From assembly GCA_965285935.1 (NCBI GenBank), contig OZ260665.1, positions 42,098,001 to 42,162,000 on the forward strand: a DNA stretch of 64,000 nucleotides. Reading direction: 5' to 3'. Source of the DNA: Ophelia neglecta. Its lineage: Eukaryota. Position numbers and translations under genes: made by a program. Shown in pieces: positions 3,965-49,610 of the stretch (its first letter is position 1; every line of letters starts with the position of its first letter). The notes beneath the pieces are model-generated. The model searched no databases. It saw only the letters and a program-made list of their open reading frames with translations, and was not told the origin of the DNA.

Positions 3965-6900
3965 AATTACGCAGTTCCGCGTTTTAGTGCAGGATAAATT
4001 GGCTTTGTTCCTTTGAACATCTAGAGCATTGTGCAGCGGAAGTGGGCGACAAGGGGCGTTGGCGAAATGTAAATGGTCATTTAATTTGGGAGATCACGCC
4101 TGTAAATCACGCCTCCAAATATCTATGTGAAACCAGGCAGCACAGCCTCACCAGAAAAAGCCTATTATATCGTTCTTGAATTTGACAACAAATAAACTAT
4201 CGCCCCTTTAAGCTTTATTGGCTATGGTATTCTCAGCAAACATGTACTATGGGGTGCTCAAATATTGAGGCCCCAGGGAAGAAGGTCGGTGATAGGAGTT
4301 ACTCTCTCCAATTGATGCACTCGTTAATTTATCAATATACGCTATATTCAAACATTGATTCATGGACAATTATATGATATTTCTTTATCTATTTGTGGGT
4401 TCATGCTAACGTTTTCTGGATTAAACATGCCAAATCCGCATGCATTGTTTTCTTGAAGACAGCAGCTTGCAGTCAAAGAGTAGGGGGAACTCTTGAAAAT
4501 CGATAGCTATTCATCCTTAGAAAATTCGATCATTATTAAATCATCACAATCATTCCTGTATACCGTATTTCATCCAAATTAACTTATCTTGTCCCTCGCT
4601 GGCCTGGCCTTATGAACTATCTCCATGATATTAATTGATATTGGCGGATTACTCTCTCAAATTTCCTATTTTTTGTCAAATGAGGTGCCAGAAAATGCTT
4701 TCGGGATTGTTTTACATCATAATTTATCGACGACATTGTCATATTTAAATATTTATTTATAAAAATAATCAAATCTACTGATGCACCAGCAGGGTTTACT
4801 CGGTTTTATAATACACTCCATGACTTTTTTCCCTATTAGAGCCAACGGGAGGTATTTCATAACCAACAGGCGCGTTTCTCATTTTTGAGCCTGATTGCCA
4901 TTAAAACAACAGTGGTCAGCTAGTGTTTAGAAGGACTAATGTCAGTTGTGCATCGGCATTCATCATGGAATTTATTCAACAGACCTTTTCTTTCAGTCCA
5001 TTGTTTCAAGGGACTGAAACAAAAAATCTGGCATTGCAAAATAGAGCTTTCCAAATATGTAATTTTCATTTTGGTATAACGTAGATTACAATGAGCATAC
5101 TAGTTAGCGCGTAAAATCAAAACTTTATCCCCACTATTGCTGTGTACTAGTCATAGAAGTCATGCATTCCTATCCCCTTCTAGAATACAAGCCGAGCTTG
5201 ACTTAGCGCTGACAACTCCAACTGTGAGTCACTAAAACTGAAACTGAAACGCAATCTGCAAAACCGGAAGCACTGGCCTACTCAGGCAGTCAAAGGTTCC
5301 ATTAAAGTAAACAAAAATTCTTATCAAACCAAAAACCACCTAGAACTTGCCATGGTCCCTTTGAACAAAAGTGACAAAAAAGAAGCAAATAGGTCAGACT
5401 TGATTCAATACAAAAATGGCCTAAGTGACACAGAAAGGGCCTAACTAACAAACTGTCATGGTAGATAGGCTATTTACATTTTGACCTATACGTGCGTTCA
5501 CAATATCTATTTCGAATAATGGTAAGATCACAGATAAAGACATAATTAACTGATAATTTCAATATTATTTTTGGTTGGTATCGGGCCTGCACTTGCTACA
5601 TCCATTGCTTTAATTAACAGACAACCATGAAAATATATGAAAGTAAAAATGGCTATGGCATTTTCTTGAAGCCTTTTACTAAGGATCGAGTAACGCATTT
5701 TTATTAAGTTTCTTAAACGGAGTGGCCCTGGCTGGGACTGATTTTCCTATCACCTTGTCAAAGCAACTGCTTAAGTTATCTTAATGATACTAGTCCATCT
5801 TATGATCTTTTGATCAGCGAACCTTTCATAATGAGCTTTTGGTTGCCAGAGTATAACAAGTTTTCAAGTCTGGTGATTGTAGACATTTTATTGATTACTT
5901 GCCAGTTTCAAATTCTTAGCTTCCTATGTTGGTGTAGATCATAGAAAGACTTGCAAATGTACTTATTGCAGTAGTAACAAGAAGTTTGGGATAAGGCAAA
6001 TCCTAAGGACTAATTGGGCTCAGATGATATATTAATTGATATAATAAATAAAATGTATTTTTCAAATTTTAAACTAATTTGTCTAAATCGACTAGCTATA
6101 TATAATCAGGCAATTTTTGTTCAGTTCCTTCGGTGGTCGAAAATTCCCTACATATTACGCTTAGCTGTTATCTCTCCGCATAATAAAACATGATTAAAAC
6201 CCTCACTTTTATAATACAAATTAGTACATCGGTATTATTATTTTATTTAAACAAAACATGGGGACGAAATTCTTTATCACCCAAAAAAATCATAAAAAAC
6301 GAGGTGTTTTAACCAGGGAACTATCCTGTGGGTCCCCTTCTTACATATAAGTTGGGGGCCGCGGTCAACCTGTTAAAGGCACAGTCTAGCGTATACCTTC
6401 ATTTATACAAAAGTTATATACCAACATTCAAAAAAAGATGGGACATTGGCTGCGAGACTGCCGGTAGGGAACCGCCGGAGGGAGGCCGGAATTTAGGCGC
6501 TTTACACTATGTGCTGAATATTGCACATAATGGAAAACCCTATACTATTAAGGAAGGTGTAACGAATTTGCTATACTGTAATCTTCCCGAAAATGAGTTT
6601 TCGTGTCTATATCAGCAGACAATGGTATTGTAGGATTATCTCTCTCATGTTTTGTTGACAGTTCGCGGCCAGCCTTGAGTGGACTACTTGTATTCATAGA
6701 GAACCTATATAACTACCATTTCTTGATATAATCTAGCTGGTTTACTGTCGTGCGGCACGGGGAAACACCGGCTTTATTTCAATGATATCGTAGAACTATC
6801 AGGATCGATACCATTGTCATTTCGCTGTTCATCTGCCTAGCTAGAATATTCGAATAAGCTTTAAGTGGGGTCGGGAGTGGGCAGAGTTTGTTCGGGTGCA

Positions 6901-9900
6901 AATGGGAAGTCACTGTTAGGAGGAAAGGGGCGGGGTATACTCTACTTGGATGTTGTAGGATGAAGGGTTGTAGGATACGGACCACTTATCTCCTCCAACT
7001 ACACCGCTTTCCCCGTCTAAAAACATCACCTCTTTTTATCGCACAATTCACCCTCTAAGTATAAACGCTATAATAGAAGTGATTTAGGGAATAAACCAAT
7101 GAACGATAATTCTCTAAATGATTGAGAGTTAATGACCGTTGTTAGCAGGTCCATGTTCCTACGACGTCATCTTCATCATTAATTTTGTCCGTATTAGCAG
7201 GGGCCTACTTTAATTCGACGAAATTAGACAAGGTATCATTGCCTTCCTGCAATTCTATCCAATTTTCGCAATCATCCATTACACGTTTATTGCACATGTA
7301 GGAATTAGATGCTTGATTATCCATTTCACATAACAGACTGTAGCGATATAGTGTTAACATTGATGGCGCCAGCTTACTTAATATGCCCTGCACACAGAAC
7401 ATACACTAAACAACTTTTATTATATTAAATATATATGTTTTCGAGGAGGTCCAACTGGTATTCACTTTCATAATAAATTTCAAAGCCCCCCCCCCCCCCC
7501 CTCCCCCTCTGCCGTAACGTGATACAGATTACTGAATGAAGACAATGGACGGATTCAACTATGTTCCCTCATCGAATCATCCAGTAAGGACTCAGATCAA
7601 CGTCAATTGGCTTACATAGGCCTACCATAAATATTGACCAGCTTAATAAGTGTCCTCTTATGGATACCGGCGGCCAGGGATATTTGACTTGCGGTAAAGC
7701 CGGGACTTGTAGGCGGAACTGAACCAGAGCCAATACAGACTTCATTTCTCTGTTGCTTCAATAAGATCAATTGCACTAACCATGCCTATTGATTATATTC
7801 ATCTTCCCTATGTAAAAGTTCGGCTTGTTTGGGTTTGGCAGCGGTTTGTTCAGGAAATAATTTCTATTACGTGAAATTATATGGTTATAACTGTGTTAGA
7901 GAGTTACACCACTCCGAATGATATAAATCAATGTTGGATGTCCAAAGCTTGTAATACTGTATACTGAAGCTCCCCCGTGAAATATGGACACGCCAAACAT
8001 GAATTGGGGTATTGGTCATGGCTATCCACGGAAAATCGTAATGCATAATGCCGTACATAGTTTTAATGATATTAATAATATTGCCACTTATAGAGCGCTC
8101 CTTTCCTCGTTAATGAGCTCAAAGAGGAAAAAATAGATAGGCCTTTATTAAGACCTCAATTTACCTTGGAATGGAATGCACATAGGCCCAAAACAGATTT
8201 AAACTAAAACATATGATTGCATACATTTATCTCCACCCAATCCGCTTTAAAAAGAGAGCTCGAAGTCTAGGAGTCTTAAAGCCTTGATATAAAGGCTTCA
8301 ACTGACTCGTTATATCTACTTAAGGCTGCTTGGCAACTGGTTCTAGAGCCTAGGTCTATATATATAAGAGACAACTCTGTCACCAGCAGCTATAGAACCA
8401 GTCTCGAAACTGGAACCTTTAGAAGCTGTTCTGAGTCTAACCTGAAGTAAACATAAACATTAAGGCTTTGTAAATTTCATTGATTATGGGAAAGAAATGC
8501 CTTACTTGGTATGTTTTTGTTTGACTTATATGTAAGTAAAGCAGTAACGTTATTGCAAATCGCATTGACAATTAGCACTCACAACTGGTCCTTTTATGTA
8601 TAGCCCCCATAACTTGTAGCCCAAAAGAATCATTGGAAATGTCCTATGCAACACGGAATTCTCAAGATGATAATTATTTTACATTTGTCTACAGCAATAT
8701 GCATTCAGGAGATGTCGTCTGGTTCGTTCAGTAGGCTGATTTTTTCTGCTCTGGTACCCTGAACTGTAAGATGCCACGGGATTTTATATGCTGTGGACAA
8801 AATGAGAAACATTCAGATTTGGAGCAATTGTTCCAAAAATATCCCTTGCATGGATAATTGTTAACCAATAACATTCATAATTGATAAGTTACAAGTGCCC
8901 AGATAAACCAAAAGGATTCTCGAACTTTTGTCGAAATCTGTGTGTTATGATGAAACTCCCATATATCGGTACTCTGAGAGATACTAGCTATTAGCGTATC
9001 TTGTTTGACCTGAGTTTAAGATTGTAACCCGGCAATTCTATTCCATTCGTTGCAAAATGTACGTGAGATGGGCAGAACGGTTCCCTGACACCAATTCGGC
9101 ACTAAAATGAGAAAAATGCATTTCTCCTTTAAGAACTATTCTTGGTGAACAATTTTGCGTTGTGTGCCAGGTATCGACTCTCTTATTTGAGTTATCCTAT
9201 ATACATATTCTAATGTCTCATCTACTGCGATCAGTTTTCACTGTGAAAATCAATGTGTTAATTTCGTGCATATATTCGTAGTTTCTTCTAAAGAAATTAA
9301 AATTTTCAATTATATATAAGGCTATTGTAAAGTACAGTTTGGTAAAGTCAGTATCAGCTATTTGGTGTGAATTTCAACATTTCCCTTCGCTTTAGATTGC
9401 TTGTCTCCATAGCTGCAGCTTCAGATATACCCTTGACTACCTGAACTCCTGATCTTATACTAGGCATATGGCAAATGTCTTGAAAAAATGGGCCGTTTAA
9501 AATTCGATTTAAGCTTAACTTGAGAATTTCAAGACCCCAGTTCTAAAGACGAATGAAGACTAAGTCTTGACGAACCCAGTATTAGTGATTGGCAGCGTAC
9601 GAGATAAGAAACAACAAAAAAAGTCTGCAGGTTCACCAAGAAACGGCAGTGCATTCGCGTTTAGCAGACATGTTCCGTGAGAAACCTATTGTGCGATTTC
9701 TGGCTTCATCTTTTGCAGTGGGTTATTGGCGGAAGGCTTTCATTTGGCCAGTAATACAAATTGTCTCCGATGTACTTGAATTCGTGATTGCTTCCTAAAC
9801 CACAGGAATGATAGATATATTGCCGACTCTGGATCCTGGATACCGAGACAAATTCTGTGAGGCCCAGAGACAAGCAAATCCGCCTCATTGGCAAAAGTGA

Positions 9901-16956: not shown

Positions 16957-19353
16957 CTACGTGACTGCCTCAGGCACTGCACGTACTTCCGCATTTTCAT
17001 CGAACTGGCCTAGCTGGCACACACTGACGTTTTTGCCGAGGTTGGTCACAGATTCGTGGTTACTCGAGCTCACTTCGGGGATGTCAGCAAATTCCGGAGA
17101 GTCACGACTAAACTGTCGTAGTTTAGTCGAGGACCGAGTAGAGGTTTCGGAGCTGTGGACCGGGCGGGACGATGGCAGGGAGGAATGAGGGGTGATGAGA
17201 GAGGGGTTGGGAGACGGTTGTCCATAAGATATCGAGCTGTGATCTTTACATCGAGAACCAGCCAGAGCAATGTCCGAATCACAAAACTGTCCGGAATGTC
17301 CCCACAAGAAAGTTCCTTGTCTGTATGTTTGCAGGGCAGGTCCGTCGGGGGTGAGGTAATCTCGAGTATTGGCTAGGTGTTTTGGGCCAGTAACCTGGGG
17401 GCCGTTTGGTGCCTGTTGTTCATCAGCAATCCGTCTCGTTTGAAAACGGCAGCGTAGAGCTTTAACAAATAAGCGGCGATATTTCCTCTTTAGTGCAACA
17501 TACACTAAAGGGTGGTAAACAGAACTAGAAGTTGCTATTAAAGTAGCAATCATTAGCCATTCAGAAGGTAATGTTTCAGTGAAGGAAGCCACAGAAGTTA
17601 GGATTACGAAAGGCAGCCAACTCAACGTGGATATTACGACTAAAAGCACCATCATGAATGTCATATGCTTGTGCCTGGAATTGGCTGGTTTCTTGATTTT
17701 TAATTGATCGGTCTGTTCTGCAAAGCTCATATTACTTCTAAGAGTAAGTTTACTATCTGCAGGCGCAGATTTTGAAAAAGAACTACTTTTATAACTGCCA
17801 GTAGTGATTGTAGAAACACGAGAGACTCGCTTTGCCGTATTATTGATGGCTAATGACCGACTGTAACGTATTGTCCTTTCCACTCGCTCAACCCGTTTGC
17901 AGACGAGACAGTAGCATACTGCTTTTATACACAATGGCGTCAATATTCCAGTTGCACAGAATACATTTGAGTAAGAGGAATGAATATCAGTTCTCGAATG
18001 CCAATAGAGAGCACATGTTAGGGTTTTGTTATCCAGCCTGAAAGAAGACCAACCACACAAGGGAGCCAAGGCCCATAGAAAAGCTACTGACCATGCCACT
18101 GCCACTGAGCGCAACATCCGGGCTTTGGTTGGTCCCTTATATGTCTGGTTAGGATGCAGAACATCACATCTGAAACAGTGAACAAATAACCGATAATGAA
18201 ATAGATATTCCAAAAATCAAGTTAACCTTTACTCAATGAATAATTACTTTACTGAAAATAACAAAAACTTAATTCCGTATAAGAGTTTGGTTGTTGATAT
18301 GTCAAACTAGAATGTTTGAAGGGCATAAAATAGGGTTAGCCAATTTGTTATATCAAAAACGAAAGCATATCCATCTATGCCGGATTCAATCTTGAGGCCG
18401 CTAGGCAAATTATACCAACAACGTTAACACAACTACATTTTCTGGTGAAAACACAGGTAAAAAATAATCATTTAATCGACAGAATTCTGTTGATTTCTCT
18501 TATCATTCTATCAGTGCAGTAAATTGTTAAGCTTAAAAACATATTGGCCTGCTATTACTGAAAATTAAGGGTTGCTTTGACCACATTGGTAGTTTGTTAA
18601 AAATAGCGAATAAAGCATAATTTCATCATATCTCTTTCCGCTTCCTTTCAGTGTCACGCATTAACCCCACATACATCATAAATTTGAAGTAAGCAGCATT
18701 TTTAATCTACATTCAATCAGTGTATTTGCGAAAGCACTGCTGCAGGAAACAGCCACTCAAGTTGTATTCGTTGGATAAGTTCAATGGATCGGAAAGTTAT
18801 GCATTGCTTACCTTTCCATTGCTATTGCCGTTGTTGTATTAAGAGCAGCAGATCCATAAAGGATAAAAGAAAATCCGTACCATCTGCAGCCTCCCCCTTG
18901 AAGAGGCCATTCTCCCACCAACATTGCCATCAAGAACATCGGCAAAGAAGTGGTAGAGTTGAGGAAGTCAACCACGGAGAGGTTGATGAGAAGGTAGTTC
19001 AATGGTGACCTGGCCAATCCATTCTTAATAAACATCATAAGGGTAACGGTATTAAGGTATGACGCAGTAATTATTATGAGAAAGATTAGTAGTATTAGTA
19101 AGTGTCTCACGGGCGACAATATGTCACTATGAAAGAATTCCTCGTCATCAATTTCCGTTGTCCAGTTGATATGTATTTCTGTCGAGCCATTGAAAGTGGT
19201 CCACACTGGAGACAGTGTTGCATTGTGGCATATTCCCTTGGTACCGACTTCCTGAGTCCAGTTAAAAGACATCCCACTGGTGGCAGTAGGCATCTTACGC
19301 ACGGATGTAACTTTGTCAATAAGGCCACTTTGAAACGCTGCTTTATCTTCCAT
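16957..19353 (-). CDS. Opsin-like class A (rhodopsin family) GPCR lacking Lys296, 584 aa, 2 coding exons
   Basis: Exons 19353-18812 and 18169-16957, joined by a phase-2 GT-AG intron inside E-R|-C. Seven hydrophobic segments. Motifs parallel bovine rhodopsin: SPLNYLLINLSVVDFL (TPLNYILLNLAVADLF), GCRWYGF, PLCGWSSFRLDNKTLTC, SWLPF, and ATLIATSSSVYHPLVY with T at the K296 position (codon 17530-17532). Confidence 0.9.
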
Positions 19354-20410
19354 TCCTTTCTTGTTCAGTTAATGGAACACTGTATAGAGGTATTTTCTGT
19401 CAGTCAATAAGAACTGTTCTCGGGGGAAGTATTGGTCACTTTGAATTTGCGGTATATGAAACCTTTGCTTGCACGATCATTAAAGTGCTGTAATCTATCA
19501 CTTCCCGTTGTATGACGCCAGTTTATTGACTTATTGGACAAAATTCCTTTACTATAAACATTGATCAGTAAATGGACAGATAATACCTGGGCACATGCTT
19601 GCGGCGAATTGAAGTAATTGCTGGCGTGATTCCTTGGAATATCGCCGCATTCAACTAGCCTAATAAATATACTGGATGCATCAAGTTCATAAATCAATAG
19701 ATATAGACTTCACATCAATGACAGAGATGTGTTTAACGTATCGCTAATGGTTCCTTAAAGATACGGCAGCAGATTCTATTTTCATGCTCTGCCCTACGGA
19801 AGCTACCAGCAGCTGGTGATGCCATTCAAAATATGACGCAGCTTGAGCACCCTGGAGGTTTGTTTCATGGGAAACTAATGAATGATCTCTTAAGTGTGCC
19901 TCCCATAGCAACCTGTATATAAGTTCCAACAGCAAGAGTATCATATATGCGTCCACAAGCAAACAATTCTTCGGGCAAATCCACGTATATCTTCTCAACA
20001 ATATATTGCTTTCTCCTGCTTCTTGCTAACAAAGAACATTAAAGAGCCAAAGTAATAGTCTTGGGTGACAACCGCCAAGAGAGATTTTGTATCAAACGGA
20101 TTAACAGGAAGTGTCCGATATTAATACACTAAACCAGACAATTATGATTTAATGATTAAAGTCAAACTTGACACAGTTGCACTCCAGGTCATGGACGGAA
20201 ATGGATACTGTAATCTCTTTAATTGTTACTCCATCTTATAATTATATATTCGGCAAGTGACATTGTTGAACAGCAACCGTCGACCTTGGGGAGTACCACT
20301 CTTCATAAGATGATTATGGATAGAAGCAATTCATAAGTTTAAAGAAAATGCACAGCAAGGCTCCAATTGCATTTGAATGATTCACCTTAATATGGTTCAA
20401 ACGTCAAGCT

Positions 20411-22559
20411 ATGATGGCCGATATTAGCAACAACACAACTGTGACCGTTATGAGGAATGAGTCCATGATGGCAGAGGAACAAGCCAACGTCTCCCAGACT
20501 GGGCGCCTTGGAGTGGCTGAAAACGATGTGACCTCTTCTCTTGTGAATATTACGAAATTAGAAAGTACATTCTCATCTAATTGGACTAAATCACCTGTGA
20601 CAAACAATACGGATATTTTCAATTTTACTTTGAGCAGCCTGGATTCTGTTCCTCGTGATAAAAACGAAACATCGCCTGTGACACAGTCCGTAGCACCAGA
20701 AAAAAACGTGTCAATCGTCAATTCTACCCTCGACGACAGCCCCTTACTTTATTATTCGTATGAATTCTCTCTCTTCCTGTTCTTTTTGATCTTAGTAGGG
20801 CTCACCTTAAACCTGTTTTTCATCAGGTTTCTTCGATCGTCAAGAGTGTTGCTTACAGTCAAAGGAACGTTCTGGTACAGCATCACCGTGACCAACCTTC
20901 TTCTATCTGGGGAAGTTTCCGTTATATTATTCGTCGCTCTTTCGAGAAAAGACTGGCCAATGCAAGACGCGGGATGTGAGGTTTTCTTTGTATCTCTTCT
21001 GTGCCTGACAGCTTTTCTTAATAACTCAATCGCTGTAATTGCCATTGAAAGGTAAGTGTTGTCAGATATTAGATTGATGTGGCCTATATCTCATATATGC
21101 AATTCAATATCGGGTTTTATAGAATTCATCTTATTATAGTCAGCCTTGAGATTCCATTTTAGTGTATTAAATTCTGTTCTTATTGATCCTAGTATTCTCG
21201 TTATAGTGCACTTTTGCCCCCCTTCATTAGATATGTTAATTCAGTATTATAAATTGTGTATACTAGTTTAAAAGACAGTTCTTAATTTTGGTCAATTTAA
21301 TATTTAGGTGTGTTTTCATTCACAAGAAATCCAAAGAAGTAAGCAACAATGCTTCCCTCAAGCGTCACTCCCTGTATATTGATCACTCCTATAAGAAGTA
21401 TGCTGCTTGTATTCTGATTGGAGCATGTGGCTGGGCATTGATTCTTGGCCTGCCGCCCATCATCGGGTGGTCTAGCACTCAGTTGGATCAAAAGAGGCTC
21501 TCTTGCCAACTCATCTCGGGGACGCTGGATGGCACACTTCCTTCATATCATATTTTCTTCATCTGCGGGGGCATCGTGCTGCCATGCATGGTGGTTTTGA
21601 TGGTGTATTTGAAACACAGACACACCGTCAAAATAATCATCGGTCAATTACAAAACAACAGACACAGGAGTTCGGTAGTAAAGCTGGCGATGAGAGTTAC
21701 GAGGGCTTCAACGACAAGCGGGCCAAGACAGAGCATCTCATCTTTGTCTTCGGTAATCATCAGAGACACAAACAATTTTATCAGACAGCCACTATCTGTA
21801 GAAATCCAAATGGAGAAACGATATATCAAATACCAAGCCATCTGGGGGATAAGCTGCATTTTGGCCTCTTTGCCCTATATTTTGGTATCATTATCTAATA
21901 CGTCGATACCCTCTTTGCCACCAGAGAGCGTCACAATCGCTTCACTCGTATACCTATGCAATCCGGTAGCTGTCCCAATTCTAATCATCTGTCTCAATGA
22001 CACACTGAGGGTAGACTTTCGCAGGTTTCTTACGGCAACTCTTTGCTTCATATCAGAGGATTTTGTGCCCACAGCGGTGGTAGCGCCTCAGGCTTACCGG
22101 TCAGGATCTAAGGACAGAAGAGACTCGGTGATCTCCAAAAAGTCAGGCGGGTCAGTGGGAGAAGAACTGAAGCAGAAAGTAGAGCGTCGACGGAGTCAGA
22201 TCGCTACGCATTGCAGTCAACCAACTTATTATGATGGGCCTGCCCTGACGCCAATCATTGAGAGACCTAGCACCTCTAACTATTCACCGAGTCCAATGAC
22301 CAGTCCCATCACCTACGGCAGCAGAATGGCACCGGAAACACTAGGACGAAAGGAAGGCATTGTAGTACGACCGTGCCCAGGAGAACTTCGTCTTGAGGAG
22401 AACGGAGAACTAACGAAGACTGAGAGCCCAGTCTCGGAAAATCCGGCAGAGTCATCAGCCACCCGAGGTCGTGTGCCCACGGGCGGCTTGAGGACTCATC
22501 CGCTACAAGTCCAATCGAGCGGCGAAAGTGACACTGGCGAACTACCCAAAATAACATGA
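20411..22559 (+). CDS. Divergent opsin-like class A GPCR paralogue, 630 aa, 2 coding exons
   Basis: Exons 20411-21051 and 21308-22559, with a phase-2 intron (AG|GTAAGT...TTTAG|G) in E-R|-C at the same position as in the neighbouring receptor. It has an N-terminus rich in N-glycosylation sequons, WPMQDAGC before TM3, LPPIIGWSSTQLDQKRLSC in TM4/ECL2, seven hydrophobic segments and a long Ser/Pro-rich tail. Confidence 0.88.
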
Positions 22560-26897: not shown

Positions 26898-28040
26898 TCA
26901 TCCAGGGCGCCACACAATACGATAGTTTTTCCCATAATTGTTGTCCCAGTAGGTAAGTCCATTTACCTGATAGCAGATAGCAAACTCGGCCGAACGTGGG
27001 CCTCTCTTTGCCAGGGTTTTCAGCGGCGGACTTTGGACTGTGAAGGAGAAGGTGTCGTAAACCGGTTGGAGACATCCCGAGGACACGTAGCTTCCCGGGA
27101 TTTCCACGTAGGTCAGCCACTCGTCGTAGGTGCAGCGAGCCGACACGCGTTTCTCATAACTCAGGTTTTTAACTTTCACACTGCAAAACACCTTACTGTC
27201 TTCCACACAAACATTCTCCAAACTAACACACTGAGCATCCAGTCGCCTCTGGAAAGAACTAAAAGACGAACCAGGTTGTTGAAAGCACAAGCTGCATAAG
27301 GTGCTGTTGATCTGTACATTTTTCTCTTTGGGGTCAATGGCAGTTGAAAAGCATTTCCTTGAGACGCTGAAGTCCTCCTCGTCAGAGGACATAGTAGGAG
27401 ACGTTGTTAGTGAGGGGGGTGAAGGTGGAGGTGACAACATCCGACGGCCCATTGCCAGCGGGTAAATGTCTCCGTGTCGACCGCCGAACAACCAGTCGTC
27501 CCAGTCGTCCTCTGAATCTTTCTGTTGATCATCAAAGTCCAATTCTTCCAGTGGGATGAAGTAATAGGAGACCAGCGACATGCCTCGCTCGTCAGCAAAG
27601 CTGACTCGACTTCGTGTTTGGCTTCCAGCGGTCAAAGACAAGTATGACAGGCCATTCGCTATTTCATGTATTTCAAATGTCTTTTCGTTCGATAGGAAGT
27701 CCTCTTCTGGAGGAGTTCCACAAGTGAACGTTGCTTTAATTTTAGTAGTATTTGTATCTTGCGCCTGAGTATTAACTGGTTCAGCACTGTTATCTGTTGG
27801 TGATGTGTACCCCGAGTCCGAATCCCGCCGTCTTCTGTATTCGCTGTTTTGTTGCCGTCGTTGTCGAAAAAGCGACGCGAGGGTGTCTTCGCGTCTCTTC
27901 GACGTAGGGCGTCGAAAAACCAATTCACCGAGGCGCTCTTCATATGTACATTGTTGTAAAACGTTTTTCCCTGTGGCACACTCTTCTTCTTCGGTTGGAG
28001 GTTCTTCGAAAAAAAGATATCTAGCAAAGTCCAGTGACAT
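26898..28040 (-). CDS. PPP1R3: Protein phosphatase 1 regulatory subunit 3 (glycogen-targeting; RVxF + CBM21), ~380 aa, single coding exon
   Basis: PP1-docking RVSFAD (27597-27608) and CBM21 signatures VKVKNLSYEKRV...CTYDEW, DTFSF and EFAICYQVNGLTYWDNNYGKNY. The likely start is MSLDF at 28040. The open frame extends to an acceptor-like site near 28156, so an upstream exon is possible. Confidence 0.92.
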   Translation of the reverse strand: MSLDFARYLFFEEPPTEEEECATGKNVLQQCTYEERLGELVFRRPTSKRREDTLASLFRQRRQQNSEYRRRRDSDSGYTSPTDNSAEPVNTQAQDTNTTKIKATFTCGTPPEEDFLSNEKTFEIHEIANGLSYLSLTAGSQTRSRVSFADERGMSLVSYYFIPLEELDFDDQQKDSEDDWDDWLFGGRHGDIYPLAMGRRMLSPPPSPPSLTTSPTMSSDEEDFSVSRKCFSTAIDPKEKNVQINSTLCSLCFQQPGSSFSSFQRRLDAQCVSLENVCVEDSKVFCSVKVKNLSYEKRVSARCTYDEWLTYVEIPGSYVSSGCLQPVYDTFSFTVQSPPLKTLAKRGPRSAEFAICYQVNGLTYWDNNYGKNYRIVWRPG

Positions 28041-31000
28041 CGTCCCCAGATTAATTTCTCTGTCTATATCAGTGCGACGAGTCGATCTCAATGGTTTATC
28101 TGTAGGAGTTTGTATCTGAAAATTTCTTCGCCCGGAGCGCTTTTTTCTTCTGAACCTGTTTAGACAAATAAACACTTAACCATGAGCTATCAAAGTCAAC
28201 AACGTGCATAAGTTATCAATGTTTTCCTAAATGGGCCTATTGACCTTCCCAATATACAAATGTGATAGCAATACCCCCCCCCCCCCCCATCGTCACTGAG
28301 AGCTATCTCGACGGGCTAACTTGCAGTTAACCTATCCTGTTGGGATATGTCTGATATTTGATGTTTATATGTCTCCTTCACTTTAGACAGCGGCAGGTAA
28401 CATACCGAGATGAATACCCAGCATGTCGATATGGCTTCTGGCTCCCACAAATAGAACATTGGCCTATATTACCATGCAGGATAACTGCCAACCATCGTTT
28501 ACTTGTAGTGTTTGGCTAAGCCGATATCTTTAAGGTGGAATGGATGCTTGCAAATATTATATAGGCCTATAATATCGTCATGACTGGCGTGTGCAGGATT
28601 ATTTGCATAGTCTAGCAGGCAGGACTGTTAACCTCCCAATCGTAAACAAAAGATTAATAATTAATTAATTTTCCATTTAGCGCCTTTAATCGTACCTTTA
28701 TCTCCCCTGGGAGTAAGCTAAAAATCATGAAATCATTGGTTATTACCATAATATTGTGCTAAATGTAATAAGGATACCACATTGCTCCATTTTTACTAAG
28801 CTGTCATTGTTTAATACCCCTCATGGCCTAGGCTTGCCGGCCCTTTATGATAGCCACAAGATATCATTTACCCAATACTATGTTTTCATTGATTTTGATA
28901 TAATAAGCCTATACAGGCGTGCGTGCGCCTTTGCTGTGTCTGGCGTATAATGCAATGTACTGTCAATATACTGTTGGTGTATTACATTGCTATTTGTCCA
29001 TATAGGCCTGGCATTACTATTGCACATATGAAATCATGTAATAATCATATATATTCAATATCACGTACGTTCACAAGCGTCGTGGAAACAATATCCATGA
29101 AATGGTGACATTAAAGTGCTCACAATTTCTATTATTGTCAATCCCTACCTTTTTAAAAGATATGTTCCAAAGTTCACTAAGACTTTACTATCCACACGCT
29201 GTGTATTTACTTGACCTTGGAAACAAGCAAGTGTCCCAAATTTGTGTCTAGGTCAAGTAGGATGTTTTTATAATAGGTGAATGGATTCATGTTGGCAAAC
29301 AAATTGATTCTGTGCCAACTACTATAGTATCCTTAATCATCGGTATATCTTCAACTTGCACGATGAATAATAGTACACAGTGTACTTTTCTTTAAGTTTC
29401 TGGGAACCGAAGCGGATATCACGTCGCTAAGCCTGTACATGAGGACGACTACATCCTACAGGCCTACGTATTACCGTCAATACATCATGTTCATGGCCAT
29501 ATAGCATGTGACTGGTACATGCTACACGTATGAGCTTATGCCTTGAACTTTGAGAACTGTGAGACTGTGTTTTAAATGAACATAGGCTGACCTTAGCTTT
29601 GCGAACGCATTAAGGATATATTCAAAATAATAATAGCCGACCAAAGATTAAGTCACAAAATTTATCCCGACATATAAAGGCCTACAACATCACAGACCAG
29701 CGAATTTGACTTTTAATCATTGAAGTAATTAAAAGTATGCAAGAATGATTATGATTGCTCGTTGGCCAAAGTCTAGGAAGTATTTGTCCTCAGATGACCA
29801 CAAGCCGCTTGTCGGACACGTACGTATTTAAGTTCAAACGAGCCTATATCCTACCTACCTAGCTAGTGATCAGCAGACGAGAACTCTGAACCGGCAAAGA
29901 CTTTCATAAACAGGTCCTCATTCAGCTTCACATCCCTTAGGCTTGACCAGATCACCTGAAAAGTGGAAAGAATATATAGGCCTATAATTTAACTTAACAT
30001 ATCTATACCATGCAGAAAACTAATGAAAATTAAACCCACAAGAGCTATCTAAACCAGACAGAACCTTGGTAAAACATATAGTTATCAAATCATAGTCCTG
30101 ATTAGACACTGATGGTAATACAAAACCCCAATCAGTGTTATAAAGTAGATCGCAAAGAAAATATATAATTACGTTTATAAAATGCTGTCTTTATGAACAG
30201 CTACGTTCCAGATCTGAATCGGGCCGACTCTACCTCCTCGATCACTCCTTACATGCACGTAATCACATTCTTTTAAATTTCAACGCATGCGTAACCCCTC
30301 ACCCCAAAGCTATAATGTACATCGCTATAGGTAGTTAGGAAGCGCACAGCTCGGCCCTGGAGAACAACTTCGAGCGAGCTTAACTTCGGTCTGGCTGCTT
30401 GGTATACTCGGCGAACGTCGAGACTACATTAAGTCACCCAATTTCCAGCCAACCAAGAGCTAGCAACAAATGCCAAAATATTTGCCTGTAAAAATCGGTT
30501 GCAATGCAGCAGGCGCTATGCGATGGACCCTCCCGAATAAATAATTGTACGATATACAGAAGTCGACCAGACCTGATAAAAAAGATAATAAAATTAAAAT
30601 AAGGTCGCGATCACGAGCGTCTTCCTGGCACAAACCCATATTGTCTATTCAGTTATTTGTTTCGACACGACAATCAACCGAGTCGATTTCTTTCTCGAAG
30701 TTTCTTTTGACTGAATGACTTCCGCACAGCTGTGTAAATCACTAGCAGGCTACTTGTACAAAAAATGTCAGAATAGAAACTTTACAAAGATAGAACTAAA
30801 GAAAGAACAGTGCGCGGCGCAAAACATTTATTAACAGAGGTTAATAAAGTTTCCTGAGTGTGATTACCCAGGGAGCCTAGAGCGGGACGGGAGACAGAAA
30901 TTCCCCAATATCACAATTAAAGGTAACCGCTTAGACGAACCAAAATCCGCTATGGTTTATCGCTCTGTTAACAATTTTACGCTCATTTGATGGTTTTGTG

Positions 31001-46085: not shown

Positions 46086-49000
46086 TATGTATGTATGTAT
46101 TTTATTAACATCCTCAACTTAATGAGAGCAATCATAGGTACAAAAATCAAACATAATTACAAATTACATGCAACAACATAATACAAAAGTTAATACATAT
46201 AATATAATATCATAGATAGTTATTTCAGCGCCATTACTCCCGATATGCAATATTGAAAATCGCTTTTGCAAACGGACCATATACCTTTGCGAAAAGTTTA
46301 ATGACATGTTCAGCAACGTCGAGGTCATCACTGTCCAGAACAGTATTCAAGCAGTATTTAACAAAAGATTTTGCATCGCAGATGTTAAGGTATACATACT
46401 CGGAGACTGGTACAAAATCTATAACGAGTGTGTCAAAACAGTCTCTAACATCGAGTAGCAAATGGCAACCACTTTCATGACACAAATGTTCAATGGGGCT
46501 GGTGACTGGAGTTTCACATAATTTACAGTGGATATCATAATTATATACATCATTTTGAATACTAAACAGGTACATTATATTCGTCATATTGTTGTTAGCC
46601 CGAATATGTGTTTTTGCAAACATGTATAGCCTCGATGGTTCCAGCTTCGTTTGAACCAAGTTAAACTCGTCGCAGCCACTTTTGATTGCCATCTCATGTT
46701 CCCATTGCTTATTTTCGCGTTCATAAATAGCCCCCCGTACAATTAACCTCCAAGACAATTTACCAGGGAAGTGCCCGTCAGTTACATACTGAGTAAGGTA
46801 TCGATGGAGCCCATACTTAAGGCATATCCGGTTCAAATCAGATACAAACCCAGATGTCGGGGTGATACCTGATTCCCAACTAGATAGGCGACTCTTAAAA
46901 ATAAGTTTAGACAGGTGACTTTCCGAGAGATCTGACAATTTTTGTAAGAACATGAGTTTCTTAGCGTCAACGACCGACTCAATTGAACCCCATCCCAAGG
47001 CACCCAGAGAGACAGCGTTGTGGGTTCTCCGTGGAAAGCCCTGGATAGATCTTGCTACATATCTCAAGGTTCTCTCCAGGAGACTCAGTTCCGCACTTGT
47101 CAAAGTGTTCCACATCTCACAACCATGCAACATCGAGGGGAGACAAATTCTTTCCCATAGCCGTGAGGAGGTCAAAGGATTAAGGCCACTGGGTCTTACC
47201 CCAATTCCAACCATAGAGGCTAGTTGTTGTCGACCTTTACGACAGGCTGCCTGCGTTCTTAACATGGAGGACAAATCAGCAGATAACAAAATGCCAACGT
47301 GGGTTTCGCTGAATACCTCCTCCAACGGTCTCCCGCCTAGATTCCACTGGCGGTTTACTTTGTTCTTGGCATGCTGACGCCTATTCTCACCAAAAGTAAT
47401 AATTTTGCTTTTTTGGAAGAAGAATGTGAAGCGCCACTTCCTGGCGTATTCGTAGGCTGCGTGTAGCATACGCTGAAGACCGTTGCAAGTGGCAGAGAGC
47501 AAAGCCGTATCGTCAGCCAAGGTAGGACTACCTACATCAACCCCCTCAACACTAATACCATCTCTTGTTAGCGAAATACATTCGTGTATATCATGATATG
47601 CTACTGAGTGATAAAACGATGACAAAATCCCCCCTTGCTTAATACTCCTAGTAATAGGTACATCACTAGATCTTAATCCGTTCACCATAACGCTCACTGT
47701 TGAGCCGGAAAACCAATTGTTTATCAAATGCCAGAGTCTCCCTTTGATACCTATATTATACAATTTAAACATCAGACCATTCCACCATACTTTGTAAAAA
47801 GCCTTCTCGGCATCAAAAAATGCGGAGAAAACTTTACTGCGCCTGTCTGTATAATGCCTCTTGTACGGTAAACGAAAGCATTACATTGTTAGACTGCTTC
47901 TTACTATGTTGAAGCCTATTAGGGAAACACTCCAACCACGATTGTAATCTCACAGCTAGGATCTTTTCCAACAATTTACTCAAGACAGGCATCAGTGTCC
48001 CCCCCGATAAGAGTTAATGTCGCTTTTGGGTTTTCTCTTCCCCTTGTACACTGACACAATGACACCCTTTTTGAAAGAGCTGGGGATGAAAATATTACCA
48101 ACTATATCATTGTAAAGCTGAGCGAGGATAACATATAATTGATTACCCCCATACCGCAGTGCCTCATAAGTTATGCCATCGAATCCCGGGGCTTTTCTCG
48201 GAGGGAGAGTTTTAGCAATATGTTCAACCTCCTGCCCTGAAAAGTCAGAGTGGAGAATTCCTGTGTCGTCCCCCAGTTCATTAAGGGCCTCTATTTCGGA
48301 AACCTTATTTTGAATGTCAGCAGAGAACAAGTTATCCCATTCTCTACTCTCATAAGGTTGCTCATTCAAGAGTACTCTATAATGTTCGCTCCACATGGAG
48401 AGGAGTTCAGAAGGCGATGTGTATGTCACGTCATTTTGTTTAATGCTATGGAAGGCTTCTTCACTCGCCCTCTTTCTCCTTACATACCGCCAGAATGCTG
48501 TAATGTCAAAATCGCTGTTATAATCTAATTTACTCATTCTTTCATCATTTTCGGCTTTGATTTTGCAGTACTGGAGTACGCGAAACCTAGATTTAGCGGT
48601 CTTATATTCCTTAAAAGGTACATGTTCTGAGCCTCGTGGAGCCCCCTCCCTCTTCCACTTCAGGCGTTTGAGTTTCTGTTCAGTATGGGACTCGTTTAGC
48701 TCGTCATCCCAATATGACTTTTGGAAGTGACTTTTCGGTACGCAGGCCGCAACTGACTAGGCTCTCTACTATAGATTGTGTCAAGGATTCAATTCTCAAT
48801 CGGTAGTCGATATGTTGGTCCACCGAAATTGACTTTAAATTCTCAGCCAAGGTAGACTGATACGAATCTTTATCAACTTTATTCCACTTGTAGGTTGGTT
48901 TACAGAAAATATTGAATCGGGGAGGACAGAAATCATATGACAAAGTAACAGGTAAATGATCGGAGGTGTTAAGAGCACACTCGTCATGGACACGTGCAAG

Positions 49001-49610
49001 GCTAACTTTGTCAAAATTGTCTGACTGCACCAAAATATGGTCGATTTGTCAACCATTGCTACCCTGCCTAGGTAAGAAAGTGTACACAGGGCCATCACAG
49101 ACGTCCGAGCAGGTGAGTGACCTCGTATTAAATCGAGTGCAGACTTCAAGTAACATGACGCCCCGTCTCGTTGGTGGATTCATACCCCGTGAGCCTGCCT
49201 CCCTACCCATTTGGCCATTGAGGTCTCCGGCAATAATCACCTGACCTAAAGCCCCATAGTAAGCACAATAATCTGCCAATAAAGAGAGGTTCTCTTCATA
49301 CACATCATCAGAGAGCTTTGTACTCGGTAGATAAGAATTTAGGAGGTATAAATCCATGCCACTAGCCGGATGCGATAGTTTGATCCCCAATAACCTATCA
49401 CTACCCACATCTGACAACTTTGACACAAAATAATCCAGATTTTTTCGCCATAGAATGGCAATACCACCACATTTACCGTGTTTCAATTCAGCAGCCCTTT
49501 TGTCGGACCTGGCGAAACAATGAAAGCTATAATCAAGGGATGATACAAAGTCAAGACAATCTGGTTTAAGGTGATGTTCCTGAATACAAAGAATATAAGG
49601 GTTGCACAGG
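46086..49610 (-). mobile_element. 5'-truncated, frameshifted LINE ORF2 (APE endonuclease + reverse transcriptase + C-terminal CCHC) with AATAAA-(TACA)n tail
   Basis: Motifs ILCIQEH (~49580), GGIAILW, YLP, IIAGDLNG, IDHILV, SDHLPV, KAPGFDGI, FFDAEKAF, IKQGGILS, LADD, HVGI and CKLC..EHLC. The frame is broken near 49040, 48750, 48000 and 47860. The 3' tail lies at 46086-46106. Confidence 0.93.

What the first reader, a model, noticed from the sequence alone, without database searches (positions are those of the whole stretch)
16957..22559. Head-to-head pair of lysine-less opsin-like GPCR paralogues: candidate two-receptor system
Seen: two 7TM genes diverge with their ATGs only ~1.06 kb apart (19353 and 20411). 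They share an identical single phase-2 intron in the ERC motif, similar ECL1/TM3 (WPLQGGGC vs WPMQDAGC) and ECL2 (PLCGWSSFRLDNKTLTC vs PIIGWSSTQLDQKRLSC), long Ser/Arg-rich ICL3s and a DGPAL tail motif, yet are otherwise very diverged. Both frames are intact, which implies an old duplication kept under selection. Known: opsin relatives without K296 exist (placopsins, lophotrochozoan pseudopsins) and their function is unknown. Inference: a shared promoter co-expresses a near-canonical receptor with a motif-degenerate partner, as expected for an obligate heterodimer, co-receptor or decoy pair in a non-visual sensory pathway.
Basis: partly seen in the sequence, partly recalled or inferred. Interest (0 to 1): 0.8.

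Follow-up and report, generated by a model that had tools for sequence, protein, structure and literature searches.

The report
Conserved head-to-head pair of lysine-less opsin relatives
Two neighbouring, oppositely oriented receptor genes are old relatives of the light-sensing opsins that have both lost the lysine that holds the chromophore, and the same back-to-back gene pair occurs in at least two other invertebrate genomes, where one partner still has that lysine.

Summary
Two intact two-exon class-A GPCR genes are transcribed away from each other. Gene A lies on the minus strand (16957-19353, 584 aa). Gene B lies on the plus strand (20411-22559, 630 aa). A 1,057-bp spacer separates them. 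Both have a phase-2 intron in the Arg codon of E-R-C.

They are about 26% identical and show no nucleotide similarity. They are this genome's only two members of a distinct opsin-related clade, which I call family X.

Gene A's nearest relatives in a 1.8-billion-protein library are unannotated orthologues, followed by true opsins. Most of those orthologues keep Lys296, ERY, Trp265 and NPxxY. Gene A has Thr at 296 and gene B has Leu.

Gene B groups with Capitella ELU13478.1 (Gln296) and with the minus-strand partners at two other loci (partitioned tree, 95.9/95). All B-type genes lack the Tyr of NPxxY.

The head-to-head A/B arrangement, with 0.5-1.2 kb spacing, recurs in two other assemblies. 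The duplication and arrangement therefore look ancient, although AU tests do not formally reject a recent duplication (p about 0.10).

The clade is probably the "pseudopsins", but I could not test that. Co-expression could not be tested and heterodimerisation was not. This scan had already noted the Thr296 substitution on this same window.

The parts
16957..18169 (-). Gene A exon 2: last base of the split Arg codon, Cys, TM4 to TM7, helix 8, 168-aa C-tail and stop.
   Evidence: ORF and splice acceptor. Pfam 7tm_1 at 5.5e-18. Best PDB matches are squid and bovine rhodopsin.
18170..18811 (-). Gene A intron, 642 bp, GT..AG, phase 2 within the Arg codon of E-R-C.
   Evidence: Read directly from the sequence.
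18812..19353 (-). Gene A exon 1: ATG, glycosylated N-terminus, TM1 to TM3, ending in ..AIAME(R).
   Evidence: Pfam 7tm_1 at 7e-11.
19354..20410 (.). 1,057-bp spacer between the two start codons; candidate shared or bidirectional promoter region.
   Evidence: Coordinates. GC 0.39 and CpG o/e 0.66, so no CpG island. No k-mer of 8 or more is shared with the L014 and L015 spacers. A 2-bp indel polymorphism lies at 19943.
20411..21051 (+). Gene B exon 1: ATG, about 130-aa N-glycosylation-rich N-terminus, TM1 to TM3, ending in ..AVIAIE(R).
   Evidence: Weak 7tm_1 hit, E = 0.1. Placed inside family X in the exon-1 tree.
21052..21307 (+). Gene B intron, 256 bp, GT..AG, phase 2 within the Arg codon of E-R-C.
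   Evidence: Read directly from the sequence.
21308..22559 (+). Gene B exon 2: TM4 to TM7, C-tail and stop.
   Evidence: 7tm_1 at 5e-7, just below Pfam's curated score cut-off. 32% identical to Capitella ELU13478.1 exon 2.
17530..17532 (-). Gene A codon ACT (Thr) at the position of the retinal Schiff-base Lys296.
   Evidence: HMMER alignment to rhodopsins, alignment A1, codon located. Unchanged in the read contigs.
21954..21956 (+). Gene B codon CTA (Leu) at the Lys296 column. TM7 reads SLVYLCNPVAVPILI, with no Lys and no Tyr of NPxxY.
17317..17340 (-). Gene A copy of the family C-tail motif (PALQTYRQ); degenerate relative to the family pattern P-x-L-x-T/P-I-x-E.
22239..22262 (+). Gene B copy of the family C-tail motif (PALTPIIE). 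It matches the L014 partner (PALSPIVE) and resembles Capitella (PLPPIEE).

Best explanation
The locus holds an ancient, divergently transcribed pair of opsin-family paralogues, an A-type and a B-type gene. They belong to a distinct opsin-related clade that I call family X. This clade is probably the group published as pseudopsins.

Shown:
- Both genes are intact two-exon class-A GPCRs. The family-wide intron sits in the Arg codon of E/DR(Y).
- They are this genome's only family X members.
- Orthologous A-type and B-type genes lie head-to-head, 0.5-1.2 kb apart, in at least two other assemblies.
- A-type genes elsewhere carry the full opsin signature: Lys296, ERY, Trp265, NPxxY, an acidic residue at 181 and Tyr113.
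- B-type genes everywhere lack the Tyr of NPxxY and mostly lack Lys296.
- In this genome both genes lack Lys296 (Thr in A, Leu in B).

Inferred:
- The family ancestor was a retinal-binding opsin and the lysine was lost repeatedly.
- Here neither protein can form the canonical Schiff base, so neither is a conventional photopigment.
- Gene A keeps Trp265, Asp181, Tyr113, HPxxY and helix 8. It most likely still signals, as a light-independent receptor that is either ligand-gated or constitutively active.
- Gene B lacks Trp265 and Tyr7.53 but keeps the conserved tail motif. It is most likely an atypical, G-protein-impaired receptor.
- The retained head-to-head spacing suggests shared cis-regulation.
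- Physical coupling of the two proteins is only a possibility.
For: Gene models and shared intron. Pfam 7tm_1.

Opsin affinity:
- Best PDB matches of A exon 2 are rhodopsins.
- In the full HMMER scan, the top hits P0001-P0007 are unannotated orthologues (E from 5e-31 to 7.5e-20). Named opsins follow.
- About five in six of the best 150 hits carry Lys at the 296 column.

Trees:
- Opsins plus family X against non-opsin GPCRs, 100/98; A with L014A, L015A and P0007, 89/82; B with Capitella and P0081, 92/87.
- Family X in the exon-1 tree, 100/97.
- Partitioned analysis: the B-type clade (winB, Capitella, P0081, L015B, L014B, P0015) gets 95.9/95.

Conserved arrangement: L014 (GCA_029979725.1) and L015 (ERZ25084518).

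Motif table.

Only two family X genes in this genome. Canonical AK..NPxxY opsin exons lie elsewhere in the genome.

No recent gene conversion.

Polymorphism: 5 synonymous to 3 non-synonymous SNPs, frames intact.

The Lys state needs at least 5 changes on the tree.
Against: - The AU tests do not reject A and B being each other's closest relatives (p = 0.111; p = 0.0996).
- Family X monophyly is weak in the exon-2 partition (81/0) and in the partitioned tree (13/49).
- Four other loci show no partner in the DNA available: L013, L019, L033 and Capitella L032, each with 7-10 kb upstream.
- The species behind L014 and L015 are unknown, so the depth of conservation rests on sequence divergence alone.
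- No expression data exist for either gene.
- Identity with the published pseudopsins, and distinction from bathyopsins, could not be tested because I had no reference sequences.
- All functional statements are inference from motifs.
Confidence: 0.7

Rival explanations
1. The pair is a functional two-receptor system: an obligate heterodimer, or a sensor plus a co-receptor or decoy. The two are co-expressed from one bidirectional promoter, and the motif-degenerate B modulates A.
For: - The head-to-head arrangement with a short spacer is retained in three genomes.
- B-type genes lack Tyr7.53 in all five members seen, yet keep intact frames and a conserved tail motif. This suits a non-signalling partner.
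- Both types share ICL3 and tail motifs that could recruit the same cytosolic partners.
Against: - There is no expression, interaction or signalling evidence of any kind.
- Capitella carries a B-type gene with no A-type gene within 10 kb.
- Several A-type loci show no partner, so the two genes can exist unlinked.
- Class-A GPCRs are not known to need obligate heterodimers (general knowledge).
- No complex prediction was run, because only half-receptor exon pieces could be submitted.
Confidence: 0.15
2. A recent, lineage-specific inverted duplication followed by very fast divergence of one or both copies. On this view the similar arrangements elsewhere arose independently.
For: - AU tests do not reject A plus B as a clade (p = 0.111 and 0.0996).
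- A and B alone share E-R-C, the WP(L/M)Q string and DGPAL.
- B sits on very long branches.
Against: - The ML trees from both exon partitions, and from the two combined, place B with Capitella, L014B and L015B, and A with L014A and L015A.
- All B-types share the loss of Tyr7.53, and winB and the L014 partner share a near-identical tail motif (PALTPIIE, PALSPIVE).
- A and B share no nucleotide similarity.
- Three independent inverted duplications with the same geometry would be unparsimonious.
Confidence: 0.08
3. One or both genes are unexpressed relics drifting towards pseudogenes. The loss of Lys296 and of the microswitches would be decay.
For: - A has lost Lys296, ERY and the Asn of NPxxY, and its family tail motif is degenerate.
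- B has lost Trp265, Lys296 and NPxxY.
- No RNA evidence exists.
Against: - Open frames of 584 and 630 codons with canonical splice sites.
- 5 synonymous to 3 non-synonymous SNPs, with no frame-breaking variant.
- B-type genes with the same degenerate motifs are kept intact in Capitella and three other sources.
Confidence: 0.07
4. They are still light sensors. Retinal would be bound non-covalently, or through a lysine relocated elsewhere in the pocket.
For: - Gene A keeps Trp265, Asp181, Tyr113 and the disulfide cysteines.
- The pseudopsin paper itself raises retinal binding without K296 as a possibility (PMC10097855).
- From my own knowledge, not checked here: the Schiff-base lysine can be relocated experimentally in rhodopsin.
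Against: - There is no Lys in TM7 of either protein.
- The only nearby Lys in A lies in ECL2, four residues before the disulfide Cys. I cannot say that this is a workable position.
- B also lacks Trp265.
Confidence: 0.08

Closest known systems
Pseudopsins (De Vivo et al. 2023, Mol Biol Evol, PMC10097855)
   Same: - Opsin-related class-A GPCRs without Lys296.
- Found in lophotrochozoans (molluscs, annelids, nemerteans).
- Placed at or near the base of the canonical opsins.
- Function unknown.
Gene B's sister here is an annelid (Capitella) protein with Gln296. This genome's HSP70 is most like lophotrochozoan ones.
   Different: - Membership could not be tested, because no pseudopsin sequences or accessions were available.
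- The clade found here includes members that do carry Lys296 and a full opsin motif set. The published description says pseudopsins lack the retinal-binding site.
- A term search of that paper found no mention of introns, synteny or tandem arrangement.
Canonical animal opsins (c-, r-, tetra-, xen- and cnid-opsins)
   Same: - Best sequence matches.
- One clade with the opsins against non-opsin GPCRs.
- Shared TM4/ECL2 P-x-x-GW-S motif, disulfide Cys, acidic residue at 181, Tyr113 and helix 8 N-x-K-F-R in family members.
   Different: - Both window genes lack Lys296 and have E-R-C instead of E/DRY.
- B lacks Trp265 and NPxxY.
- They have a long Ser-rich ICL3, a family-specific tail motif, and a phase-2 intron in the Arg of E/DRY. 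One canonical opsin exon of this genome spans that site without a break.
Other lysine-less opsins: gluopsins (Glu296, insects) and nemopsins (Arg296, nematodes), Guhmann et al. 2022, PMC9368030
   Same: Opsin-clade receptors that replaced Lys296 and have derived NPxxY motifs. The L014 B-type gene also has Arg at 296.
   Different: Those groups sit inside the chromopsin, RGR and retinochrome part of the tree and occur in other phyla. Family X is a separate clade.
Bathyopsins (Ramirez et al. 2016, PMC5521729; chiton members in PMC10733189)
   Same: A rare, sparsely distributed Lys296 opsin group that includes lophotrochozoan (brachiopod, chiton) members. This is like the sparsely sampled, Lys-bearing A-type genes.
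   Different: There was no reference sequence to compare, so identity or difference is untested. Bathyopsins are reported as sister to c-opsins. Family X did not group with the amphioxus c-opsins here.
Bidirectional (head-to-head) gene pairs sharing a promoter
   Same: Divergent orientation with about 1 kb between start codons, retained across species.
   Different: Transcription start sites and co-expression are unknown. There is no CpG island and no conserved spacer sequence.

Membership tests
Class A (rhodopsin-family) GPCR, Pfam PF00001 | 7tm_1 profile match over TM1-TM7 | tested here: met
   A exon 1 scores 42.5 bits and A exon 2 scores 65.8 bits, both above the 30.5-bit cut-off. B exon 2 scores 29.8 bits and B exon 1 scores 12.5 bits, both below the cut-off when taken alone. 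They match the complementary profile ranges.
Animal opsins | Lys296 (7.43) in TM7 for the retinal Schiff base | tested here: not met
   A has Thr (ACT, 17530-17532). B has Leu, or Ser in the other register. There is no Lys in TM7 of either gene.
Animal opsins | Closest relatives by sequence are opsins, and the genes fall in the opsin clade against other GPCRs | tested here: met
   The tree gives 100/98 for opsins plus family X against eight non-opsin GPCRs. The outgroup was limited, with no melatonin receptors or placopsins.
Animal opsins | Counterion and pocket residues: acidic 181, Glu or Tyr at 113, Trp265, Cys110-Cys187 | tested here: inconclusive
   A has Asp181, Tyr113, Trp265 and both Cys. 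B has Asp181, Phe113, Ser265 and both Cys. This rests on alignment only.
Animal opsins | Binds retinal and responds to light | not testable with these tools
   Needs expression and spectroscopy.
Pseudopsins (PMC10097855) | Opsin-related, no Lys296, lophotrochozoan | tested here: met
   No Lys in either gene (see above). Capitella is the sister of B. The best named hits of this genome's HSP70 are bivalves, Owenia, a chiton and gastropods at 76-79%.
Pseudopsins (PMC10097855) | Falls in the published pseudopsin orthogroup or clade | not testable with these tools
   No supplement is held. No accession numbers appear in searchable text.
Pseudopsins (PMC10097855) | Sister position to all canonical opsins | tested here: inconclusive
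   The quick tree puts family X sister to 54 canonical opsins (96). The careful tree gives an unresolved polytomy with r-opsins and the rest.
Bathyopsins | Clusters with echinoderm or Lingula bathyopsins, sister to c-opsins | not testable with these tools
   No reference sequence was obtainable. Family X did not group with the amphioxus c-opsins.
Melatonin receptors | Best matches to MT1, MT2 or GPR50 | tested here: not met
   The only match is a weak hit of A exon 1 to a melatonin-related receptor (E = 5e-4, rank about 54). There are none among the 60 listed hits for A exon 2, nor in the 8 hits for B exon 2.
Conserved bidirectional gene pair | Divergent orientation, short spacer, arrangement retained in other species | tested here: met
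   Spacers are 1,057 bp in the window, at most about 1.17 kb in L014 and 487 bp in L015.
Conserved bidirectional gene pair | Co-expression from a shared promoter | not testable with these tools
   No RNA run holds the stretch. The runs laid on it are DNA contigs.
Obligate heterodimeric GPCR pair | Physical interaction required for trafficking or signalling | not tested
   Only exon-sized half receptors could be submitted. There is no experimental handle.

The most novel reading that the evidence does not exclude
Family X is an ancient opsin lineage organised as a conserved bidirectional two-gene module. One gene is a Lys296-bearing A-type sensor. The other is a B-type partner without the Tyr of NPxxY, acting as a co-receptor, modulator or decoy. 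The published lysine-less pseudopsins would then be derived members of this true-opsin lineage rather than a pre-opsin sister group. In this species the whole module would have become independent of light.
Probability: 0.15. Interest if true: 0.8.

Novelty: new variant of a known kind. Interest (0 to 1): 0.55.

Why it matters
The pseudopsin paper left one question open. Are lysine-less opsin relatives of lophotrochozoans a sister group that predates retinal binding, or are they opsins that lost the lysine?

In the clade found here, Lys296-bearing members with a complete opsin motif set are interleaved with members carrying Thr, Leu, Arg, Gln, Asn, Met or Ala at that site. That pattern favours repeated loss from a retinal-binding ancestor.

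The clade also offers natural matched pairs for experiment. Lys-bearing and Lys-less orthologues can be compared directly, and so can an A-type gene and its conserved B-type neighbour.

The conserved head-to-head arrangement is a concrete, testable lead for co-regulation of two opsin-family receptors.

If the clade turns out not to be the pseudopsins, it is a poorly annotated opsin-related lineage in its own right.

Tried and rejected
- **Word-indexed protein search.** A exon 2 alone and a 12-row family alignment both returned nothing. The relatives share too few exact 5-mers, or Ser-rich words swamped the search. This is uninformative. The third search went to HSP70 to place the genome.
- **RNA evidence.** None is available. 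The three runs that hold the stretch are DNA contigs of one sample.
- **Spacer conservation.** No k-mer of 8 or more is shared by the three intergenic spacers.
- **Extended synteny.** No other window ORF matches the related loci.
- **Gene conversion between A and B.** There is no nucleotide similarity.
- **AU tests of A plus B as sisters.** Not significant: p = 0.111 on exon 2 and p = 0.0996 on the partitioned data.
- **More pairs.** L013, L016, L017, L019, L032, L033, L041 and L042 show one gene only, or the contig is too short.
- **Taxon of the other loci.** A paper search for GCA_029979725 found nothing, and treekit gives no origins for these loci.
- **Link to the published pseudopsins.** No supplement is held and the Capitella accession appears in no paper.
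- **ESM Atlas.** It returned only generic 7tm_1 clusters.
- **Own-genome searches with named peropsins.** They gave no close orthologue and no clue to the taxon.
- I did not build, search or fold the spliced full-length proteins. Every search was run exon by exon by reference. The combined phylogeny used two separate alignments as partitions.
- **Complex and structure prediction not run.** Half receptors would give meaningless interfaces, and I make no binding claim.

Full report
**1. What is in the sequence**

Two genes face away from each other.
- Gene A is on the minus strand. Exon 1 runs 19353..18812. A GT donor follows at 18811-18810 and an AG acceptor at 18171-18170. Exon 2 runs 18169..16957 including the stop. 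The product is 584 aa.
- Gene B is on the plus strand. Exon 1 runs 20411..21051 and exon 2 runs 21308..22559. The product is 630 aa.
- The start codons are 1,057 bp apart.
- In both genes the intron splits an Arg codon after its second base. That Arg sits in Glu-Arg-Cys, the position of the E/DRY motif.

All four exon pieces match Pfam 7tm_1, and the matches cover complementary parts of the profile; only the two gene A pieces clear Pfam's curated cut-off. Exon 2 of A and exon 2 of B are 26% identical (E = 2e-13). The genes share no nucleotide similarity, so there has been no recent gene conversion.

DNA contigs from one public sample cover the whole stretch.
- They keep both frames and both position-296 codons.
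- They differ at eight coding sites, five synonymous and three non-synonymous.
- This is a small sample that leans towards constraint.

Everything was done exon by exon.

**2. They are opsin relatives without the lysine**

The best solved-structure matches of A exon 2 are squid and bovine rhodopsin. In those alignments Lys296 falls on Thr. B exon 2 matches solved GPCRs only weakly.

I ran a full HMMER scan of 1.8 billion representative proteins with A exon 2.
- It gave 661 hits.
- The best seven (E from 5e-31 to 7.5e-20, 29-35% identity) are unannotated exon-2-sized ORFs from raw contigs.
- The next named hits are amphioxus c-opsins and sequences labelled peropsin from octopus, sea star and acorn worms.
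- About five in six of the best 150 hits carry Lys at the 296 column, within an A-K-x..N-P-x-x-Y context.

In a careful ML tree of the TM4-TM7 region, the opsins plus the new relatives separate from eight non-opsin GPCRs at 100/98.

The genome itself has at least six canonical opsin TM7 exons with A-K..NPxxY elsewhere. The loss of lysine is therefore specific to this locus.

**3. A distinct clade with two old lineages**

A, B and their nearest relatives form a clade that I call family X.
- Support is 100/97 in the exon-1 tree, 85 in a quick exon-2 tree, and a weak 81/0 in the careful exon-2 tree.
- This genome has only two members, A and B.

Family hallmarks:
- a phase-2 intron in the Arg of E/DR(Y), also present in Capitella;
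- a long Ser-rich ICL3 with an L-A-x-R-V-S core;
- a C-tail motif P-x-L-x-(T/P)-I-x-E.

The two lineages behave as follows.
- Gene A groups with P0004, P0006 and P0007 (89/82).
- Gene B groups with Capitella teleta ELU13478.1 and P0081 (92/87).
- With exon 1 and exon 2 analysed as separate partitions, the B-type clade gets 95.9/95. It contains window B, Capitella, P0081, the L015 partner, the L014 partner and P0015. The A-type clade gets 77.9/80.
- Forcing A and B together costs 18-21 log-likelihood units. The AU test does not reject it (p = 0.111 and 0.0996).

**4. The arrangement is conserved**

L014 (NCBI assembly GCA_029979725.1) shows the pair.
- An A-type gene lies on the plus strand. 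Its exon 1 ends ..AFER, and it has ERY and Lys296.
- At most about 1.17 kb upstream of its start, a B-type gene lies on the minus strand.
- The B-type exon 1 ends ..AVER with the same phase-2 donor.
- It has an extra intron after TM4, Arg at 296, N-P-I-I-T in place of NPxxY, and the tail PALSPIVE. Window B's tail reads PALTPIIE.

L015 (ENA ERZ25084518) also shows it.
- An A-type gene with Lys296 has a partner exon 1 on the opposite strand, 487 bp from its start.
- That exon falls in the B-type clade.
- A B-type exon 2 (P0015) comes from another contig of the same sample.

Four other loci with 7-10 kb of upstream DNA, including Capitella's B-type gene, show no partner. No other gene and no spacer sequence is shared between these loci and the window.

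**5. Motif states**

| Feature | A-type genes elsewhere | Window A | B-type genes |
|---|---|---|---|
| Position 296 | Lys | Thr | Leu, Gln, Gln, Arg, Lys |
| E/DRY | ERY | ERC | ERC in window B; Capitella ERS |
| Trp265 | present | present | absent in window B only |
| NPxxY | present | HPxxY | Tyr absent in all five members |
| Helix 8 | N-x-K-F-R | K-R-K-Y-R | not conserved |
| Position 181 | usually Asp or Glu | Asp | Asp in window B |
| Position 113 | Tyr | Tyr | Phe in window B |
| Tail motif | P-x-L-x-T-I-x-E | degenerate (PALQTYRQ) | intact in window B and L014 |

On the tree, the Lys/non-Lys state needs at least five changes, all inside family X. Because the neighbouring canonical opsins all carry Lys, repeated loss from a Lys-bearing ancestor is the simplest reading.

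**6. Which organism, and which known family**

An intronless HSP70 of this genome is 76-79% identical to those of bivalves, the annelid Owenia, a chiton and gastropods. It has no closer named hit. The genome is therefore a lophotrochozoan without a close annotated relative in that database.

De Vivo et al. 2023 described pseudopsins.
- They are lysine-less opsin relatives of molluscs, annelids and nemerteans.
- They sit next to the canonical opsins.
- The authors raise as an alternative that they are divergent opsins that lost the retinal site.

Family X fits that description, and its Capitella member makes identity likely. I could not test it, because no sequences or accessions were available. 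A term search of that paper found no mention of introns, synteny or tandem arrangement.

Gluopsins and nemopsins are other lysine-less opsins, but they sit in other clades and phyla. Bathyopsins are a rare Lys-bearing group with lophotrochozoan members. I could not compare them.

**7. How it most likely works**

Shown: an old, intact, divergently oriented pair of opsin-family genes, and in this genome neither has a Schiff-base lysine.

Inferred:
- Neither protein is a conventional photopigment.
- A probably still couples to G protein as a light-independent receptor. From general knowledge, Lys296 mutants of rhodopsin are constitutively active.
- B, like all B-types, lacks Tyr7.53 and is probably G-protein-impaired. 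It is nevertheless kept under selection.
- The retained geometry points to shared regulation.

Heterodimer, co-receptor or decoy function remains a hypothesis, with no supporting or contradicting data here.

**8. Verdict**

The most useful new points are two. The clade contains Lys296-bearing members, and the pair itself is conserved.

Noticed in passing
window 26898-28175 (-): Single-exon 425-aa ORF with a C-terminal CBM_21 glycogen-binding module (E = 6e-27). It looks like a protein phosphatase 1 glycogen-targeting (PPP1R3-type) subunit gene, 4.3 kb beyond gene B.
   Followed up: partly
window 46234-49486 (-): Run of long minus-strand ORFs (512, 181 and 145 aa). The largest has a weak reverse-transcriptase match (RVT_1, E = 1e-4). 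This is probably a LINE-like retroelement copy. Similar RT ORFs sit upstream of the family X genes at L013 and L019.
   Followed up: partly
G000 C1:35.81-35.87 Mb (L004-L008): Five near-identical tandem copies of a multi-exon class-A GPCR, spaced about 13-21 kb apart. Their TM4/ECL2 and TM7 exons resemble opsins weakly (27-33% identity).
   Followed up: no
G000 C2:96.75-96.78 Mb, C5:32.81 Mb, C5:95.89 Mb, C8:66.53 Mb, C9:41.32 Mb (L043-L048): Canonical opsin TM7 exons with A-K-S/T..NPxxY. The C8 copy has the r-opsin-like HPKFR helix 8, and the two C2 copies lie 25 kb apart. The genome therefore keeps an ordinary opsin repertoire.
   Followed up: partly
L014 8456-8929: The spacer between the A-type and B-type genes in GCA_029979725.1 contains a long low-complexity CT/GA-rich repeat, which reads as poly-Leu/Ser or poly-Lys/Glu ORFs. 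The window's spacer has nothing like it.
   Followed up: no
L014 about 6800-6950 (-): The B-type gene of L014 has an extra intron between TM4 (ending ..PPMFGWSEYQ) and ECL2. The window and Capitella B-type genes lack it.
   Followed up: partly
P0033 and P0081 C-termini: The Capitella B-type protein and its relative both end in ..KNNTHV, which looks like a class-I PDZ-ligand C-terminus. Window B ends ..LPKIT. Several A-types end in L/M-P-x-V-E/D-x, which suggests a second conserved motif at the very C-terminus.
   Followed up: no
window 19943: All three read sets lack 2 bp in the intergenic spacer relative to the assembly. They also carry 12 SNPs across the 5.6-kb stretch.
   Followed up: partly
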